Positions 12,914-17,833 are shown, counted from the first letter of the stretch. The stretch: 64,000 bases of DNA from Diplonema japonicum (GCA_964019335.1 OZ025733.1:248001-312000); one strand, 5' to 3'. Notes: generated from the letters alone by a model not told the origin. A program made the numbers and translations.

Positions 12914-13198
12914 AAATTCTCTCCTCGCCTAATATATTTTTTGTGTCGATCCTTCACATAAGTTGAAGTAGCTTTTTTTTTCTTCTTTTTTCCTTTCTTT
13001 CGTCCCCCATTGACCTGCATGTCAATTTCTCAAAAGAGAAAGGGGTTTAAAAAAAAAAAAAAAAAAAAGACCACATGTGTCTGCTCTTCATTTTTTGTTT
13101 TCTTTGATGAGTGTTTGTTCTTTTTTCTTTCCTTCTCTTTTTTTTTGTATCCTCATACCCCCCCCTCCCCAGTGTATAAAAGAACGAAGAAAAAAAAA

Positions 13199-16100
13199 AT
13201 GGGCGCGTCCCAAAGCGATGAAAAGTCCTTAGAAGGATCACCTAAACACAGTGCAGCACGACGGGGCTCGCGGGCAAACCAGACACAGAGACGTAACAGC
13301 TATGTGAAGGCGTTCCCAGAAGTGAAACCGAAGGTTGTGGACAACTGTGAAAACGTGCAATTCGAAAGGGTACCAATGCCGCCGAGGCCCGGAGACACGA
13401 CAGTGTGGCCCGGTATATTCTCAGATGTGTCGTTGCCTGGGGGGCTGAACCCTTATGGGGACGGCGACAATGACACAAGGCGCAGCAACAAACAAGGCGC
13501 TTCTGGAATTGGTTTCATTCAATTCCTCCCAAGCCTTCCCGTCGACCTTCCTCGAAACGCTTTCTTCATACCAAACAAAGCCCTCCCTATCACAGCACGC
13601 TTCGCAAACACATCTTTAACCGACGACGCAGGCATGGACATTCGATCCTTCTCCATAAAGCTTGGAGAAGCAACAGACACCAGCCACCTAGACCTTCTCT
13701 TTCTAACAGGCGAGACTTCTCCATGGTGGTCTGCCTCAAGCCTCCGACAGTGGGCGTCGGCGCATATGAACGGAACAGAGGCATTGAAGGACTTCTTCAG
13801 GCAGCGGCCTTATTCATTCGACTCGTATGTGAAGAACCTCAAGAGAACGCCTTCTTCGTATGCTAATCTGTGTTATTACACGCATTCTGCTTACGAGCTT
13901 CGAGATCTCGATGGATGTCTTCACCATGTCAAGTTTAGAGTGTGCCCGTTGAATAAGAAAGATGAACCCTTGCCGGATCCGGATGCAGCCGCGCCGTGGC
14001 ATCCCGGGAGGTTGAAGGGCATCCCGCAGACCCGGCACTACCTCATCGAGGATTTTATGAAACGGTTGGAGACCCGCCCCGTCGTGTACACCCTCGAGGC
14101 GCAGATCGTCCACAACGTTGACGAGCTCGGGGATGAGTATCTGAACCCGGTGCTCCCCACCCAGCTGGAATGGAATGTCATCGGCGAGATCATCATAGAG
14201 GAACCCATACCTAACAGCATCGGTGATTTTGTGTACTACACTGTGGCAAACCACCCAGAATGCCTCCGCCCACCACCTGTCGGATCGCAGGACGATTTTA
14301 ACTCAGTACTGGCGATCCGGCAAGCGTGCTTCCCGAAACAGAAAGACGTCGAAAAACCGGTTTTGTACGATGGGCCTGGAGGAGGGCTCTCACGGTATAT
14401 CATCAGGATATCTGTGGGGGGCTGCAAGGGGAAGCAAAACAATGCCGCGGTGCACATTACGCTGATGGGGCAGCTCGACGGGGAGGAGATTGAAACAGAG
14501 CCGATGCGGTTGAGCCACTGGGCGGACAACACGTTCGGGCAGCTCTCCATCGACGAATGGGGCGTCTGCTCCACCGTGGGCCTCGACGAGATATCCATGG
14601 TGCGCATGAAGCTAAAACCAGTTGGCTCAGAGAAGTTCTCACGTTGGTTTGTAAAACGAGTCGAAGTCTTCGACCAGATGACGCAGGACAGCCCGTGGAA
14701 ACTCGGAATGACGGTCACCGTACATGCTGCCGACGAAATGGAAACCGTTTACAAAAGACTGGGGCGGCCCTGGCGGTCGGAGTACACATCACGAGCCGGC
14801 CATGAAGCTGTGATATCCGAAGTAAACACAACTGATAAAACAGCCCGCTTACAATTTTCCGACGGTGCACTTTCATGGTACCCTTCACAGTGCATTTCAT
14901 CTGTGGTTGTTGCACCAGATGACGGTGAACCCGACGCTACGCTTGGCTTGGAATTCGACGGCGAACGGCTGACCGGGGTACGGGACGGTTCCGCGGGAAG
15001 CTCAGCAGGGCTGAACTACTTCGTCGGCCGACGAGTCACACACGTCAACGGCCTAGTAGTAGCCGACATTGCAATCCAACAACTGATGGCCGACCGGACC
15101 GAAATCAACCTTGAGCTCTCCTTTGAAGATGAAGAAGGCCCCCTTGTCTTCCCCGCGTACAGATGGTTCGACGAAGGTGAGATCATTCTATTCGAGGGAT
15201 CTCATATGCTGCTGCACAAGGAGCACGATCTGGCTGCGTCACGGTTCCGCTCCCTCCAGCTTGACATCAGAAGAACGGAGTACGAATGGGGAGCGTATGA
15301 TGGACTACCATTTGGTTTGAAATGTATAGATGGCGTTATTGGTCTCCCTCCCGGTGAGCGTCCTGTGATGCTGTCTGATTTAGACTTGAAAATGCTGTTT
15401 GAACGGAAAAGCAAGGATTTGCTGTTGAGAAACCTCTCTGAGGGACCTGCAGGGGAGGGGTTTAAGACGCTTGACGAGTACAACGATTTGTATTTTTCGA
15501 TGCAGTCGTTCGGGCAAACACCGCTTCCCATGAGGCAGGACCAGTGGATGGCTGACCCCGACTACGGGCATCAATTTCTCGGGGGAAGCTTCTGCCTGTC
15601 CTTGAAGAAATTCACGACGGACATCATGGAGAGCCACGCCTCGTTCTCAATCCGCGCGGATTTGATCGAAGATCTTCTACCGAGCTCCGACAACAATCTC
15701 GCACAACTTCTTTCGAAGAATCTTCTGTACTGTGTGGACTACACTGTGCTCCATGGGTTGGAGTGCATTCCAGGACGCTATGTTCCGGCGCCTTTTGTGT
15801 TGTTCATGTACACGGACCTCCCTGGGTTTGAGGGGCCGCCTCAGCTTGTTCCCTTGGCGATACAGCTCAGCCCGAAGGATGCTTTCATATGGACCCCTGG
15901 GAATTGCACACCAGCTGAGTGGGCCATTGCGAAAACGTGTGTTCTGACCGCCGCGGCACATATTCACTTCTTCGGGTATCGAATGCTTTACACGCAGTTT
16001 TGTATGGAACCGTTCGTGGTGTCGACAAAGCGTAACCTCCCTGACCCGCACCCTGTTTTCAAAATATTGGAACCGCACGTGAAGAGGTCGTTGGCCGTCA

Positions 16101-16984
16101 TGGTTCAGAACAGGCAGTACTTGCTGGGGAAGAAAGGGCTGTGCGCAGAGGTTTTCTCACTAACCGAAAAGGGCCAGAAGGACCTGCAAAAAAAAATGTA
16201 CAAAGAATGGGGTTTCTTACAATTCTCGAACTTCGAGGAGAATATGGCCCACCGCGGGATGAACGACCTCCCCGTGTATTGCTACAGGGAGGTTGGTTGT
16301 CAGTTCTGGGACGTCATCGAATCATACGCCCTCGGGCTGGTCATGAAAATGTACCACACGGAGAGCGATGTCATAAAGGACACCGATCTCGCTGTCTGGG
16401 TGGAAGAGGTTAACACAGCGTTTGGAAGACAAGAAGTCCAGATAACAAACAGGAAACAATTGGCTGGCGTTCTCACAAGCTTTATTTACACCGTCTCCGT
16501 GCTTAATGCGGTTGTCACGCATTCCATGTGGGACAGCATGGGGTGCGTGCCTTTCTCGCCCTTTTCACTGTACGCGGAGCCTCCGAAGACGCATGATGAC
16601 AGCGCTGATGATGATCATGTCGATGAAAGGTTATTGAGTATGTTGCCGTCTCGTAGGGAGGCTGCTAAGCAGGTTGTGTTGGTGTGGATGTTGGCAACGT
16701 TCTCCTTCACAGATCTGCAGAAAGCGTATTCGGACTGCGATGTCCTCCGCCAACCTCAAGAGCACCATGGTGGCCTGCTGCCCCTCGCACATTGGAACGA
16801 AGACCTCTTTATCCACGAAGATCTCACGCACCTTGTATCCCTGTTCCAGTCGGACTTGTGCCACGCTGGCAACCTCACCGTGTCTCAGAACGCAAAACTC
16901 GCGTTTCCCTTCATCTACCTGGCGCCCCTTACCATCCCCAACTCCATTACTCCACCGCCTAAAAGGCGTATTTTAGAGACGTGA
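13199..16984 (+). CDS. Catalase-related allene-oxide-synthase-like / PLAT (split by SH3-like and PDZ-like inserts) / lipoxygenase-like fusion protein, predicted catalytically inactive, 1261 aa
   Basis: N-terminal domain resembles coral cAOS (ARFAN...DDAGMDIRSFSIK, TGE, YANLCYY, ANHP..L......DDFNS...IR); the C-terminal part is LOX-like (MEPFVVSTKRNLPDPHPVFKILEPH, LVPLAIQL, Y.YRE.G..FWD.I, YLAP..IPNSI); N-terminus MGASQS. Confidence 0.9.
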   Translation: MGASQSDEKSLEGSPKHSAARRGSRANQTQRRNSYVKAFPEVKPKVVDNCENVQFERVPMPPRPGDTTVWPGIFSDVSLPGGLNPYGDGDNDTRRSNKQGASGIGFIQFLPSLPVDLPRNAFFIPNKALPITARFANTSLTDDAGMDIRSFSIKLGEATDTSHLDLLFLTGETSPWWSASSLRQWASAHMNGTEALKDFFRQRPYSFDSYVKNLKRTPSSYANLCYYTHSAYELRDLDGCLHHVKFRVCPLNKKDEPLPDPDAAAPWHPGRLKGIPQTRHYLIEDFMKRLETRPVVYTLEAQIVHNVDELGDEYLNPVLPTQLEWNVIGEIIIEEPIPNSIGDFVYYTVANHPECLRPPPVGSQDDFNSVLAIRQACFPKQKDVEKPVLYDGPGGGLSRYIIRISVGGCKGKQNNAAVHITLMGQLDGEEIETEPMRLSHWADNTFGQLSIDEWGVCSTVGLDEISMVRMKLKPVGSEKFSRWFVKRVEVFDQMTQDSPWKLGMTVTVHAADEMETVYKRLGRPWRSEYTSRAGHEAVISEVNTTDKTARLQFSDGALSWYPSQCISSVVVAPDDGEPDATLGLEFDGERLTGVRDGSAGSSAGLNYFVGRRVTHVNGLVVADIAIQQLMADRTEINLELSFEDEEGPLVFPAYRWFDEGEIILFEGSHMLLHKEHDLAASRFRSLQLDIRRTEYEWGAYDGLPFGLKCIDGVIGLPPGERPVMLSDLDLKMLFERKSKDLLLRNLSEGPAGEGFKTLDEYNDLYFSMQSFGQTPLPMRQDQWMADPDYGHQFLGGSFCLSLKKFTTDIMESHASFSIRADLIEDLLPSSDNNLAQLLSKNLLYCVDYTVLHGLECIPGRYVPAPFVLFMYTDLPGFEGPPQLVPLAIQLSPKDAFIWTPGNCTPAEWAIAKTCVLTAAAHIHFFGYRMLYTQFCMEPFVVSTKRNLPDPHPVFKILEPHVKRSLAVMVQNRQYLLGKKGLCAEVFSLTEKGQKDLQKKMYKEWGFLQFSNFEENMAHRGMNDLPVYCYREVGCQFWDVIESYALGLVMKMYHTESDVIKDTDLAVWVEEVNTAFGRQEVQITNRKQLAGVLTSFIYTVSVLNAVVTHSMWDSMGCVPFSPFSLYAEPPKTHDDSADDDHVDERLLSMLPSRREAAKQVVLVWMLATFSFTDLQKAYSDCDVLRQPQEHHGGLLPLAHWNEDLFIHEDLTHLVSLFQSDLCHAGNLTVSQNAKLAFPFIYLAPLTIPNSITPPPKRRILET

Positions 16985-17251
16985 GTGGTGGGGTTTTTTT
17001 TATTGTCATGGTCCTTCTGGGCCTTTTTTTTTTTTTTCCCCTCTCTCTTCTATCTATAGATACAATAAAACAAAAAAAAAAAAAAAAGGAACGATTCTAT
17101 TCTTTTTTTTTTTTGTGTACAGATGAAACCCAAAAAAGAAAAAGAAAAAAAAAAACCTATTTACACCAATTTCTCGCTTTTTCTTTATAAAATTTATTTT
17201 TTTTGTGCGTATCCCATACTCCCCCCCCCATAACAAAACAAAGGGAAGAGA

Positions 17252-17833
17252 ATGCCTACCGTGACAGGGAAGAGGGTGTTGAAGCTTAGAAGTGACGGGT
17301 CAGTCGATGGTTTCGCGGGGATAGAAGTTCTGAAGGAAAAACAGGCCGACACGCTGAAAAGTTTTCGAACATGGGCGCGGAAGGGGGAGTGGACGAAGTT
17401 CCACAAGTCACACTATGACTGGTGGATGTTTCCTAATGATGAGCTCAGCGGGTATGGCGCGGCCTACACTCTAGGACCTGCAGACTGCATGGCAATCCAG
17501 AACGATAAAGAATTTATGGAAAGCCTCCTTGAAGGGGTCGACCTGCTCTTTCGTGCTTGGGGGTGGAACCTGACAGAGCGGAAAACGGTGGACAAGCCAG
17601 ACACCAAACAAGGTCAGAAATGGACCCAGTACCCAGTGCGCCTTTACAAGGCAGGCCTCTCCATGATGGTCCTTGACCAAACCGAAACACTGTCACACAT
17701 CAGGTTCTTTGCTGACTCCCTCCGTGCTAAAGGGGACAGGCTGTGCTTCTCTTCCAGTATACACCGCAACCAAGAGTGTCTGGTGCTGTGGGATACCCAC
17801 AAAATGCCTGATTACTTGCCTTGCAGATCGTGA
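17252..17833 (+). CDS. Hypothetical protein, possibly OGFr-N/DUF1810-like
   Basis: 193-aa ORF of normal composition; HxSHYDWWMFPxDExS resembles the H..I.W.FP..E.S motif of OGFr-like domains. Confidence 0.55.
   Translation: MPTVTGKRVLKLRSDGSVDGFAGIEVLKEKQADTLKSFRTWARKGEWTKFHKSHYDWWMFPNDELSGYGAAYTLGPADCMAIQNDKEFMESLLEGVDLLFRAWGWNLTERKTVDKPDTKQGQKWTQYPVRLYKAGLSMMVLDQTETLSHIRFFADSLRAKGDRLCFSSSIHRNQECLVLWDTHKMPDYLPCRS

What the first reader, a model, noticed from the sequence alone, without database searches (positions are those of the whole stretch)
13199..16984. Coral-type AOS-lipoxygenase fusion apparently converted into a double pseudoenzyme with a myristoylation motif
Seen: an intact 1261-aa ORF with catalase-like, PLAT and LOX domains in the order of the coral (Plexaura) allene oxide synthase/8R-LOX fusion. 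Aligned by eye to the remembered coral protein, the catalase-like domain lacks the distal His (RATH becomes RRSN, ~13478-13489), the distal Asn (MNTGE becomes FLTGE) and the proximal heme Tyr (RxxxY becomes RQACF, ~14318-14332). The LOX domain lacks its iron ligands: HxxxxHLLxTH becomes HFFGYRMLYTQ (~15965-15997), HAAVN becomes NAVVT, and the C-terminal Ile carboxylate is replaced by an extension (IPNSITPPPKRRILET). Structural motifs are kept, and the N-terminus MGASQS fits MGxxxS. Inference: an oxylipin-synthesis enzyme retained as a membrane-tethered lipid-sensing or scaffolding protein. I know of no description of such a protein.
Basis: partly seen in the sequence, partly recalled or inferred. 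Interest (0 to 1): 0.88.

Follow-up and report, generated by a model that had tools for sequence, protein, structure and literature searches.

The report
Dead AOS-lipoxygenase fusion turned scaffold protein
A marine protist (a diplonemid) keeps, expresses and conserves a gene descended from a two-enzyme oxylipin-making fusion that has lost its heme-binding tyrosine, its distal heme residues and its iron-binding residues and gained two protein-docking modules, so it is most likely a membrane-attached scaffold or lipid binder rather than an enzyme.

Summary
Window 13199-16984 (+) is an intact, intron-free 1261-aa gene. Its best solved relative is the coral allene-oxide-synthase/8R-lipoxygenase fusion (3dy5, E 1.6e-82).

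HMMER and MAFFT L-INS-i alignments put non-ligand residues at the proximal heme ligand, both distal heme residues and all five iron-ligand positions:
- Heme side: H67 to N97, N137 to L169, Y353 to F378.
- Iron side: H to R928, H to Q933, H to N1103, N to T1107. The C-terminal Ile carboxylate is replaced by Pro plus a further extension.

It is not a decaying gene:
- RNA contigs cover exactly 13190-17012 and start just after a trans-splice AG, 9 nt before the ATG.
- A close relative gives dN/dS of about 0.12.
- Orthologues with degenerate ligands, the same C-terminal extension and, where the N-terminus is known, the MGxxxS start occur in Artemidia, Hemistasia and a third, unnamed source.

It folds as a Mind-bomb REP-type SH3-like barrel plus a PDZ domain, both peptide-docking modules.

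The same genome holds at least eight ligand-retaining LOX genes and four more ligand-less ones. Other first readers of this scan noted those on other pieces of this genome.

Verdict: a conserved double pseudoenzyme, probably an N-myristoylated membrane scaffold or lipid binder. The function is inferred. I found no description of it in the held literature.

The parts
13188..13198 (+). Trans-splice acceptor AG (13188-13189) after a polypyrimidine tract, followed by a 9-nt all-A 5'UTR.
   Evidence: RNA-run contigs of X8 and X9 both begin at 13190 (table 8). The sequence is shown.
13199..16984 (+). Complete coding sequence, 1261 aa plus stop, with no intron.
   Evidence: RNA contigs are colinear with the genome and show no joints.
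13199..13216 (+). MGASQS, an N-myristoylation consensus (Gly2, Ser6).
   Evidence: Conserved as MGAEQS in Artemidia and MGSSES in P0001. The start codon is fixed by the mRNA 5' end.
13217..13360 (+). Basic N-terminal linker with two RRxS motifs (RRGS, RRNS), then a conserved VPxPPRxGD..WPGxF arm.
   Evidence: Sequence. P0001 has RRMS. Alignment.
13361..14353 (+). Catalase-related AOS-like domain (residues 55-385), heme ligands lost.
   Evidence: 1u5u E 1.6e-28 and 3dy5 E 8.9e-31. L-INS-i alignment. It is the only such domain in the genome.
13478..13489 (+). RRSN in place of RATH. The distal His67 is Asn97.
13703..13705 (+). Leu169 in place of the distal Asn137.
14318..14332 (+). RQACF in place of RVAVY. 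The proximal heme ligand Tyr353 is Phe378.
14387..14680 (+). PLAT/LH2 beta-sandwich (residues 397-494).
   Evidence: AF2 model residues 13-110 against 3dy5_C 373-482: Z 12.1, rmsd 2.1. Pfam PLAT is weak, E 0.032.
14687..14905 (+). Inserted SH3-like barrel of Mind bomb REP type (residues 497-569).
   Evidence: Model 113-185 against 4xi6_A 314-400: Z 10.8, rmsd 1.8, 70 residues aligned. A related domain occurs in the L006 ORF.
14912..15136 (+). Inserted PDZ domain (residues 572-646).
   Evidence: Syntenin PDZ2: TMt 0.80, rmsd 1.9. Dozens of PDZ structures at Z 9-10. 47% identical to PDZ repeats of the L007 ORF.
15137..16948 (+). Lipoxygenase catalytic-fold domain (residues 647-1250), iron ligands lost.
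   Evidence: PF00305. AF2 mean pLDDT 89.2, pTM 0.92. Foldseek TM 0.82-0.84 to 5-LOX and 8R-LOX.
15965..15997 (+). HFFGYRMLYTQ. The ligand histidines are replaced by Arg928 and Gln933.
16505..16519 (+). NAVVT in place of HAAVN. The ligands are replaced by Asn1103 and Thr1107.
16949..16981 (+). TPPPKRRILET. The canonical terminal A-I is replaced by T-P, followed by a 9-residue basic extension.
   Evidence: Conserved as TPPPVRRV in P0020 and LPVS[KR]R... in Artemidia and Hemistasia. The last 6 residues have pLDDT below 50.

Best explanation
The gene encodes a conserved, expressed pseudoenzyme of a diplonemid (Euglenozoa). It descends from a catalase-related allene-oxide-synthase / PLAT / lipoxygenase fusion.

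Shown:
- Both catalytic folds are kept, but the proximal heme ligand, the two distal heme residues and all five non-heme-iron ligand positions hold residues that cannot do those jobs. An invariant Arg sits where the first iron-binding His should be.
- Two peptide-docking modules, a Mind-bomb-REP-like SH3 barrel and a PDZ domain, have been inserted between PLAT and the LOX core.
- The mRNA is trans-spliced 9 nt before the ATG, so the protein starts MGASQS.
- The gene evolves under purifying selection.

Inferred:
- The protein is N-myristoylated and sits on a membrane. The basic RRxS-containing linker and PLAT may assist this.
- It no longer oxygenates fatty acids or converts hydroperoxides.
- It works as a scaffold. 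Its REP and PDZ modules would hold short motifs or C-terminal tails of partner, probably membrane, proteins. The two dead enzyme domains would serve as rigid platforms and possibly as pockets for fatty acids or for oxylipins made by the organism's own ligand-retaining lipoxygenases.
For: Homology and residue equivalence:
- Pfam LOX.
- phmmer to 3dy5, E 1.6e-82, with numbering that places R928, Q933, N1103 and T1107 on H757, H762, H943 and N947, and N97, L169 and F378 on H67, N137 and Y353.
- L-INS-i alignments of 26 cAOS and 31 LOX domains give the same result.
- The roles of these cAOS residues are stated in PMC5617202.

Fold retained: the LOX-domain AF2 model has pLDDT 89 and pTM 0.92, with TM 0.82-0.84 to solved LOXs.

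Insert domains: PLAT Z 12.1, Mind bomb REP Z 10.8 at rmsd 1.8, PDZ Z about 10 and TMt 0.80.

Expression:
- Runs X8 and X9 carry spliced-leader tails at the next gene's acceptor (loose ends at 17243), so they are RNA.
- Their contigs cover 13190-17012 and not the spacers.
- Depth is 9-18 here against 62-221 on the neighbouring genes.

Selection:
- 12 synonymous and 5 non-synonymous differences to a close relative over 233 and 814 sites. dN/dS is 0.12 and the binomial p is 3e-5.

Orthologues:
- P0002 from Artemidia motanka, P0005 from Hemistasia, and P0001 plus P0020 on one ENA contig.
- All share Arg at ligand position 1 (where that region is present), degenerate other ligands and the IPNS[ILV][TL]P...R C-terminal extension. 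The MGxxxS start is seen in the two with a known N-terminus (P0001, P0002).
- The dead cAOS domain is among the best-conserved parts, at 47-49% identity (PLAT is 45-57%).

Candidate oxylipin sources: at least eight ORFs in the genome keep THLGxTH, HSWVN and a C-terminal INT/INV.
Against: - No direct evidence for myristoylation, membrane location, partner binding or lipid binding.
- N-myristoyltransferase (PF01233) was not found in the 62.5 Mb held, but the tool warns that the search proves nothing.
- Two orthologues keep the distal His, and Artemidia keeps 2 of the 5 iron-ligand positions. Loss was therefore stepwise, and some residual or altered chemistry in some members cannot be excluded.
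- The PDZ domain is absent from the Artemidia orthologue, so it is not essential to the family's core function.
- The REP assignment rests on a single structural match to a model of pLDDT about 80-88, with no Pfam hit.
- The dN/dS rests on only 17 listed differences from low-depth contigs.
Confidence: 0.6

Rival explanations
1. It is a regulator or decoy of the organism's active lipoxygenases. It would sequester PUFA substrates or hydroperoxide products, or pair with an active LOX, as many pseudoenzymes do with their active paralogues.
For: - The same genome has at least eight ligand-retaining LOX ORFs.
- It also has four more ligand-less LOX-only paralogues with MG N-termini.
- The LOX fold is very well preserved.
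Against: - The ligand-retaining LOXs belong to a distant, bacterial-type subfamily. A profile of the ligand-less paralogues does not even detect them, so heterodimerisation is unlikely.
- This reading does not explain the REP and PDZ inserts or the conserved dead cAOS domain.
Confidence: 0.17
2. It is still an enzyme. It would use a different cofactor arrangement, or metal-free chemistry, in one or both domains.
For: - Gln933, Asn1103 and Thr1107 carry oxygen or nitrogen donors.
- Artemidia keeps two His ligands and both other orthologues keep the distal heme His. P0001 has His at the proximal position.
- Strong conservation around the former active-site helices.
Against: - An invariant Arg sits at iron-ligand position 1.
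- The terminal carboxylate ligand is lost in every member.
- No residue is shared across orthologues at the proximal heme position (F, H, F).
- The replacement residues differ between orthologues, which is not what a new conserved active site looks like.
Confidence: 0.08
3. It is a neutrally decaying relic, or the ligand losses are an alignment artefact.
For: - Long stem branches lead to the diplonemid clade in both domain trees: 1.47 for cAOS, and 0.81 plus 0.62 for LOX.
Against: - The 3.8-kb frame is intact, and the gene is transcribed and trans-spliced.
- dN/dS is 0.12, p 3e-5.
- Full-length or partial orthologues occur in three further sources.
- The ligand columns lie inside strongly conserved motifs in two independent alignment methods.
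Confidence: 0.03

Closest known systems
Coral allene oxide synthase-8R-lipoxygenase fusion (Plexaura homomalla; PDB 3dy5, 1u5u, 2fnq)
   Same: - Same domain order: catalase-related domain, PLAT, then LOX core.
- Best sequence match in the PDB (E 1.6e-82).
- LOX fold TM about 0.8.
- Heme-propionate Arg64 and Arg102 equivalents are kept.
   Different: - All catalytic residues are replaced: H67, N137, Y353, the three His and one Asn iron ligands, and the terminal Ile.
- A 150-aa REP plus PDZ insert lies between PLAT and the core.
- There is a myristoylation-type N-terminus with a 90-aa N-terminal arm, and a C-terminal basic extension.
- It is not phylogenetically nested with animal fusions.
Uncharacterised 'AOS-LOX protein-like' genes of Branchiostoma and Lingula (e.g. 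XP_066267927.1, XP_035691859.1, XP_013388118.1)
   Same: They are fusions with partly degenerate heme and iron ligands in my alignments. Some end ...ITP or ...VTP instead of ...IAI.
   Different: - They form a separate, animal clade in the tree, so the degeneration is independent.
- They have no REP or PDZ insert and no MG N-terminus.
- Different ligand subsets are lost.
Scaffolding pseudoenzymes in general (pseudokinases, pseudophosphatases and the like)
   Same: The catalytic fold is kept, the catalytic residues are lost, selection is purifying, and interaction modules have been added.
   Different: I found no pseudo-lipoxygenase or pseudo-catalase-AOS described. No paper in the held library combines lipoxygenase with pseudoenzyme or diplonemids with lipoxygenase.
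Mind bomb 1 REP domains and PDZ scaffold proteins (4xi6; syntenin, MAGI, Scribble)
   Same: The inserted modules share these folds. In animals both bind short motifs in the cytoplasmic tails of membrane proteins (established knowledge).
   Different: Here they are embedded inside an enzyme-derived protein of a protist. Sequence similarity to the animal domains is only 14-25%. No ligand is known.

Membership tests
Lipoxygenase (PF00305) | Sequence and fold homology to the LOX catalytic domain. | tested here: met
   102.9 bits against a cut-off of 23.6. AF2 pLDDT 89, TM 0.82-0.84 to 5-LOX and 8R-LOX.
Lipoxygenase (PF00305) | Non-heme iron ligands: three His, one Asn (or His), and the C-terminal Ile carboxylate. 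| tested here: not met
   R928, Q933, N1103 and T1107 occupy the ligand positions. The canonical ...AI end is replaced by TP plus 9 residues.
Lipoxygenase (PF00305) | Dioxygenase activity on polyunsaturated fatty acids. | not testable with these tools
   Needs a recombinant protein assay.
Catalase-related allene oxide synthase (cAOS) | Homology to the catalase-core cAOS domain. | tested here: met
   1u5u E 1.6e-28 over residues 94-379. No Pfam Catalase hit.
Catalase-related allene oxide synthase (cAOS) | Proximal heme ligand Tyr353. | tested here: not met
   Phe378. The orthologues have His and Phe. The residue's role is given in PMC5617202.
Catalase-related allene oxide synthase (cAOS) | Distal His67 and Asn137. 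| tested here: not met
   Asn97 and Leu169. The distal His is kept in P0001 and P0002, and the Asn is lost in all three.
Catalase-related allene oxide synthase (cAOS) | Heme-coordinating Arg64, Arg102 and Arg360. | tested here: inconclusive
   The R64 and R102 equivalents are kept (R94, and the R of TARFAN). R360 aligns with Glu385, but at the poorly aligned end of the domain.
AOS-LOX fusion architecture | One polypeptide in the order cAOS, PLAT, LOX core. | tested here: met
   Two HMMER stretches on 3dy5 in that order, but interrupted by the REP plus PDZ insert.
N-myristoylated proteins | Met-Gly start with a small residue at position 6, on the true N-terminus. | tested here: met
   MGASQS. 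The mRNA 5' end lies 9 nt upstream, leaving no earlier ATG in the transcript. The motif is conserved in the orthologues.
N-myristoylated proteins | Actual lipid modification and membrane binding. | not testable with these tools
   The NMT family search of the held genome found nothing, but the control also failed, so it is uninformative.
PDZ domain | PDZ fold with a carboxylate-binding loop. | tested here: inconclusive
   The fold is met (Z 9-10; TMt 0.80 to syntenin PDZ2). The loop reads LGLEF rather than GLGF. Pfam gives only PDZ_Tricorn at E 0.055.
Mind bomb REP (SH3-like) domain | REP-type barrel fold. | tested here: inconclusive
   A single clear structural match: 4xi6_A 314-400, Z 10.8, rmsd 1.8, 70 residues. 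There is no sequence-family hit.

The most novel reading that the evidence does not exclude
This is the founding example of a class of 'pseudo-lipoxygenases'. Here a dead AOS-LOX fusion has been rebuilt into a myristoyl-anchored receptor or adaptor. Its empty substrate channels would read fatty acids or oxylipins made by the cell's own active LOXs, and it would pass that state on through REP- and PDZ-bound tails of membrane proteins. That would be a lipid-signal transduction device of a kind not described in any eukaryote. Independent ligand-degenerate counterparts exist in amphioxus and brachiopods.
Probability: 0.25. Interest if true: 0.85.

Novelty: new variant of a known kind. Interest (0 to 1): 0.64.

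Why it matters
Lipoxygenases and catalase-related AOS are treated in the literature purely as oxylipin-forming enzymes. I found no report of a catalytically dead, selectively maintained member.

This gene shows that both folds can be re-used non-catalytically. It also shows one route: loss of cofactor ligands together with insertion of peptide-docking modules and a lipid anchor.

Three further points follow:
- Automatic annotations such as 'allene oxide synthase-lipoxygenase protein-like' (amphioxus, Lingula) or 'ALOX5' (Hemistasia) cannot be read as evidence of an oxylipin pathway.
- Diplonemids are among the most abundant marine heterotrophic protists. This genome carries an unexpectedly large LOX repertoire, both ligand-retaining and ligand-less.
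- At least one diplonemid is genetically tractable (my own knowledge). The scaffold or sensor hypothesis is therefore testable if the gene occurs in that species or this organism can be transformed.

Tried and rejected
I could not inspect the 634,926-bp ENA contig that carries P0001 and P0020. I therefore cannot say whether an intron or a frameshift splits that orthologue, nor name its organism.
- **Pfam on the separate pieces** gave nothing for the cAOS part or the REP-like part, and only sub-threshold PLAT and PDZ_Tricorn hits.
- **Other searches on the insert** led nowhere: the protein-atlas search on the REP-like part gave no usable hit, and phmmer of the insert against PDB gave only chance-level hits.
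- **Two further homologous-protein searches** (the cAOS domain alone, and the C-terminal 402 aa) found no extra orthologues.
- **Two MAFFT runs on full-length proteins** timed out. I replaced them with domain-wise L-INS-i.
- **P0011** is not the Plexaura protein, as I had guessed from its length of 1066 aa. It is from Lingula.
- **A profile of the ligand-less paralogues** did not detect the other Pfam-LOX loci, so those are a distant subfamily.
- **Horizontal transfer from animal degenerate fusions** was considered and rejected. I raised it because of the shared ...ITP ending with amphioxus, but the LOX tree puts amphioxus inside the animal clade and the diplonemids elsewhere with a metagenomic sister, P0019.
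- **The NMT search** was uninformative.
- **Organism names of the runs are coded.** The diplonemid assignment rests on three things. The spliced-leader tail matches. There are 157 genomic copies of CTACAGTTTCTGTACTTTATTGGT. One copy (L014) extends upstream with 2 differences from the 'Euglenozoa 14' SL in PMC3795323, which from memory is the Diplonema SL. The named orthologues are diplonemids.


Full report
**The gene.** The window reads like a euglenozoan polycistron. Nearly all long ORFs are on the + strand and are separated by poly-T/poly-A spacers. The frame holding the finding is open from 13010. The first ATG is at 13199 and the stop at 16982-16984, giving 1261 aa.

**Organism.**
- Contigs of runs X8 and X9 carry loose ends ...CTACAGTTTCTGTACTTTATT directly in front of position 17243, 9 nt upstream of the next gene's ATG. 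That is the 3' part of a spliced leader.
- The genome held for this window (G000, 62.5 Mb, 132 contigs) has 157 copies of that sequence followed by GT.
- One copy reads ACCAACGATTCTAAAGCTACAGTTTCTGTACTTTATTG. It differs at 2 positions from the SL listed as 'Euglenozoa 14' in PMC3795323. From my own memory that is the Diplonema SL.
- The only close relatives of the protein that carry a name come from the diplonemids Artemidia motanka and Hemistasia phaeocysticola ('Hpha').

I therefore take the organism to be a diplonemid. The run records are coded, so I cannot name the species.

**Homology and the catalytic positions.**
- Pfam finds only Lipoxygenase (PF00305, residues 780-1169, 102.9 bits).
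- Against all PDB sequences the best hit is the Plexaura AOS-LOX fusion 3dy5 (E 1.6e-82), in two stretches. Residues 94-498 match chain 64-469 (cAOS plus PLAT). Residues 650-1172 match chain 472-1007 (LOX).
- The isolated cAOS structure 1u5u matches at E 1.6e-28.

Reading the HMMER alignment by its own numbering gives the following.

| Coral residue | Role | Window residue |
|---|---|---|
| R64-A-T-H67 | distal His | R94-R-S-N97 |
| N137 (MNTGE) | distal Asn | L169 (FLTGE) |
| Y353 (RVAVY) | proximal heme ligand | F378 (RQACF) |
| H757, H762 (8R-LOX His384, His389) | iron ligands | R928, Q933 |
| H943, N947 (His570, Asn574) | iron ligands | N1103, T1107 |

The heme roles of H67, T66, N137 and Y353 are stated in PMC5617202. 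The iron-ligand identities are established knowledge of the 8R-LOX structure.

L-INS-i alignments of 26 cAOS domains and 31 LOX domains reproduce every assignment. Canonical members show R-x-[TS]-H, MNTG, R-x-x-V-Y, H-x4-H-x4-H, QHAAVN and a ...PNS[IV]AI end in the same columns.

The window protein ends ...IPNSITPPPKRRILET. The position of the terminal Ile, whose carboxylate binds iron, is therefore Pro1252, and nine more residues follow.

Three small corrections are listed in the observation check.

**The folds are kept.** An AlphaFold2 model of residues 646-1261, built on a 38-row alignment, has mean pLDDT 89.2 and pTM 0.92. Only the last six residues fall below 50. Foldseek aligns it to 5-LOX, 8R-LOX, 12-LOX and 15-LOX-2 with TM 0.79-0.84.

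Between the two HMMER stretches lie about 150 residues that the coral protein lacks. A model of residues 385-660 (pLDDT 73; the sub-domains score 80-90) resolves three modules:
- **PLAT.** Model 13-110 against 3dy5_C 373-482: Z 12.1, rmsd 2.1.
- **SH3-like barrel.** Its one clear match is the REP domain of Mind bomb 1: model 113-185 against 4xi6_A 314-400, Z 10.8, rmsd 1.8, 70 residues.
- **PDZ domain.** Model 179-262. Syntenin PDZ2 gives TMt 0.80 and rmsd 1.9, and dozens of PDZ structures score Z 9-10.

Both inserted modules have relatives elsewhere in the same genome. A REP-like unit lies in an ORF on C11 (L006). Four PDZ repeats, one of which the genome search matched at 47% identity, lie in another C11 ORF (L007). 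The insert was therefore probably assembled from lineage-own domains.

**Expression and the true N-terminus.** X8 and X9 are RNA. They carry SL-joined ends, and depth differs 5- to 20-fold between neighbouring genes. Their contigs cover 13190-17012 with no differences in X9, one synonymous change in X8, and no joints. The spacers on either side are uncovered.

Both assemblies start at 13190, right after the AG at 13188-13189 that follows a long polypyrimidine tract. That is the usual trans-splice acceptor context. The 5'UTR is then nine A's, and ATG 13199 is the first possible start.

The protein therefore begins MGASQS. The Artemidia orthologue begins MGAEQS. P0001 has MGSSES at its second Met, and the gene caller probably started nine codons too early. 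Gly2 plus Ser6 is the classical N-myristoylation consensus.

The following linker is basic and holds two RRxS motifs (RRGS, RRNS; P0001 has RRMS). This would suit a myristoyl-electrostatic switch, but that is inference only.

**Selection.** Run X12 holds contigs of a close relative (95-99% identical). Of the 17 differences listed inside the CDS, 12 are synonymous and 5 are not. They fall over 233 synonymous and 814 non-synonymous sites. That gives dN/dS of 0.12, with binomial p = 3e-5 against neutrality.

The sample is small and the contigs are shallow. Sequencing errors would, however, push the ratio up, not down.

**Orthologues.** An exhaustive HMMER scan of 1.84 billion representatives gave 2032 hits. 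The top ones are:
- P0001 (908 aa) and P0020 (205 aa), which lie on one ENA contig and match the N- and C-terminal parts.
- P0002 (Artemidia, 1545 aa).
- P0005 (Hemistasia, a C-terminal fragment).

The ligand states across these orthologues are as follows.

| Position | Window | P0001 | P0002 | P0005 | P0020 |
|---|---|---|---|---|---|
| distal His | N | H | H | - | - |
| distal Asn | L | T | A | - | - |
| proximal Tyr | F | H | F | - | - |
| iron ligand 1 | R | - | R | R | - |
| iron ligand 2 | Q | - | H | N | - |
| iron ligand 3 | N | - | H | N | Q |
| iron ligand 4 | T | - | T | T | S |

All four C-termini are extended. Loss of the cofactor sites is therefore old and family-wide, but it was completed stepwise and differently in each lineage. 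That pattern fits relaxed constraint on chemistry, not a new shared active site.

The exception is the invariant Arg at ligand position 1, which may now fill the former metal cavity (inference).

Per-domain identity to the orthologues is 47-49% for the dead cAOS domain, 45-57% for PLAT, 36-46% for LOX, 41% for PDZ (absent in Artemidia) and 24% for the REP-like barrel.

**Phylogeny.**
- In a LOX-domain tree of 71 rows, the window protein, Artemidia and Hemistasia form a clade (SH-aLRT 99). Its sister is a ligand-degenerate metagenomic protein, P0019 (99). The clade sits on a long stem, and its deeper position is unresolved.
- In the cAOS tree the three diplonemid sequences form a clade (100) on a stem of 1.47 substitutions per site, again unplaced.
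- The amphioxus and Lingula 'AOS-LOX-like' proteins, which in my alignments are also partly ligand-degenerate, sit inside the animal clade. Their degeneration is independent.

'Coral-type' therefore describes the architecture, not the ancestry.

**Genomic context of the family.**
- G000 holds only one cAOS-like domain.
- It holds four LOX-only paralogues with no ligand left. Three of them begin MGxxxS, and two also carry CGCG.
- It holds at least eight further ORFs of 610-680 aa that match Pfam LOX weakly. These keep THLGxTH, HSWVN and a C-terminal ...INT or ...INV, so they are candidate active enzymes of a distant, bacterial-like subfamily.

Other first readers of this scan flagged these genes independently on other pieces of the genome. 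I had already seen them before that look-up.

**Interpretation.** Shown: a transcribed, trans-spliced, selectively maintained protein with two intact enzyme folds, no cofactor ligands, two inserted peptide-docking folds and a myristoylation-type start.

Inferred: it is a membrane-tethered scaffold. The former substrate channels may additionally bind fatty acids or oxylipins. I put about 0.85 on 'conserved non-catalytic derivative' and about 0.5-0.6 on 'membrane scaffold or lipid binder'.

Rivals are a LOX regulator or decoy (0.17), residual or novel catalysis (0.08), and decay or artefact (0.03).

**Literature.** In the held library, no paper combines lipoxygenase with pseudoenzyme or diplonemids with lipoxygenase. 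The AOS-LOX papers found all deal with active cnidarian enzymes. The library omits most subscription journals, so this is absence in what I could search, not proof.

**Limits.**
- G000 may be incomplete.
- The run and organism names are coded.

Noticed in passing
G000 C2:536466-536861, C21:642552-642791, C26:637623-640968 (two copies), C22:261776-269196 (three copies), C34:275144-275548; loci L009-L013: At least eight ORFs of 610-680 aa match Pfam Lipoxygenase weakly. They keep a full-looking ligand set (THLGxTH, HSWVN, C-terminal ...INT or ...INV). Some lie in tandem, and one begins MGGACG. They are candidate active LOXs of a distant, bacterial-like subfamily.
   Followed up: partly
L002 (C78), L003 (C33), L004 (C22), L005 (C42): Four LOX-only paralogues (524-800 aa) have every iron-ligand position replaced. 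Three start MGxxxS (MGDVQS, MGNTFS, MGLAPS), and two of these also carry a CGCG motif that would suit palmitoylation.
   Followed up: partly
P0003, P0004, P0007 (Branchiostoma), P0011 (Lingula), P0029, P0010: Animal proteins auto-annotated as 'allene oxide synthase-lipoxygenase protein-like' or 'ALOX5' also lack several heme and iron ligands in my alignments. Some end ...ITP or ...VTP instead of ...IAI. They form a clade separate from the diplonemid one.
   Followed up: partly
P0019 (JGI/IMG metagenome, 595 aa): A ligand-degenerate LOX (T/H/A/T at the four side-chain positions) is the supported sister of the diplonemid clade in the LOX tree. Its origin is unknown.
   Followed up: no
P0002 (Artemidia motanka EP01065_P018030): This orthologue has an extra SH3-like unit near the N-terminus and an insert of roughly 290 aa inside the N-terminal part of the LOX domain. 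It lacks the PDZ domain.
   Followed up: no
window 17243-17254: The trans-splice acceptor of the next gene (ATG 17252) is shown directly by SL-bearing loose ends in two RNA runs. That gene has 5- to 20-fold higher contig depth than the pseudoenzyme gene.
   Followed up: partly
L007 (G000 C11:649200-652346) and L006 (C11:155064-158366): L007 encodes a protein with four PDZ repeats of the same subtype (F[IV]GxR[LV]THVNG) followed by a B-box-like Cys/His cluster. L006 encodes a protein with a REP-like barrel among repeated CxxC-containing units. These are the likely domain donors for the insert.
   Followed up: partly
G000, 157 places (e.g. C24:7176-45967, six copies): Spliced-leader exon sequences followed by GT are scattered over most contigs, often near contig ends, rather than sitting in one tandem array.
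   Followed up: no
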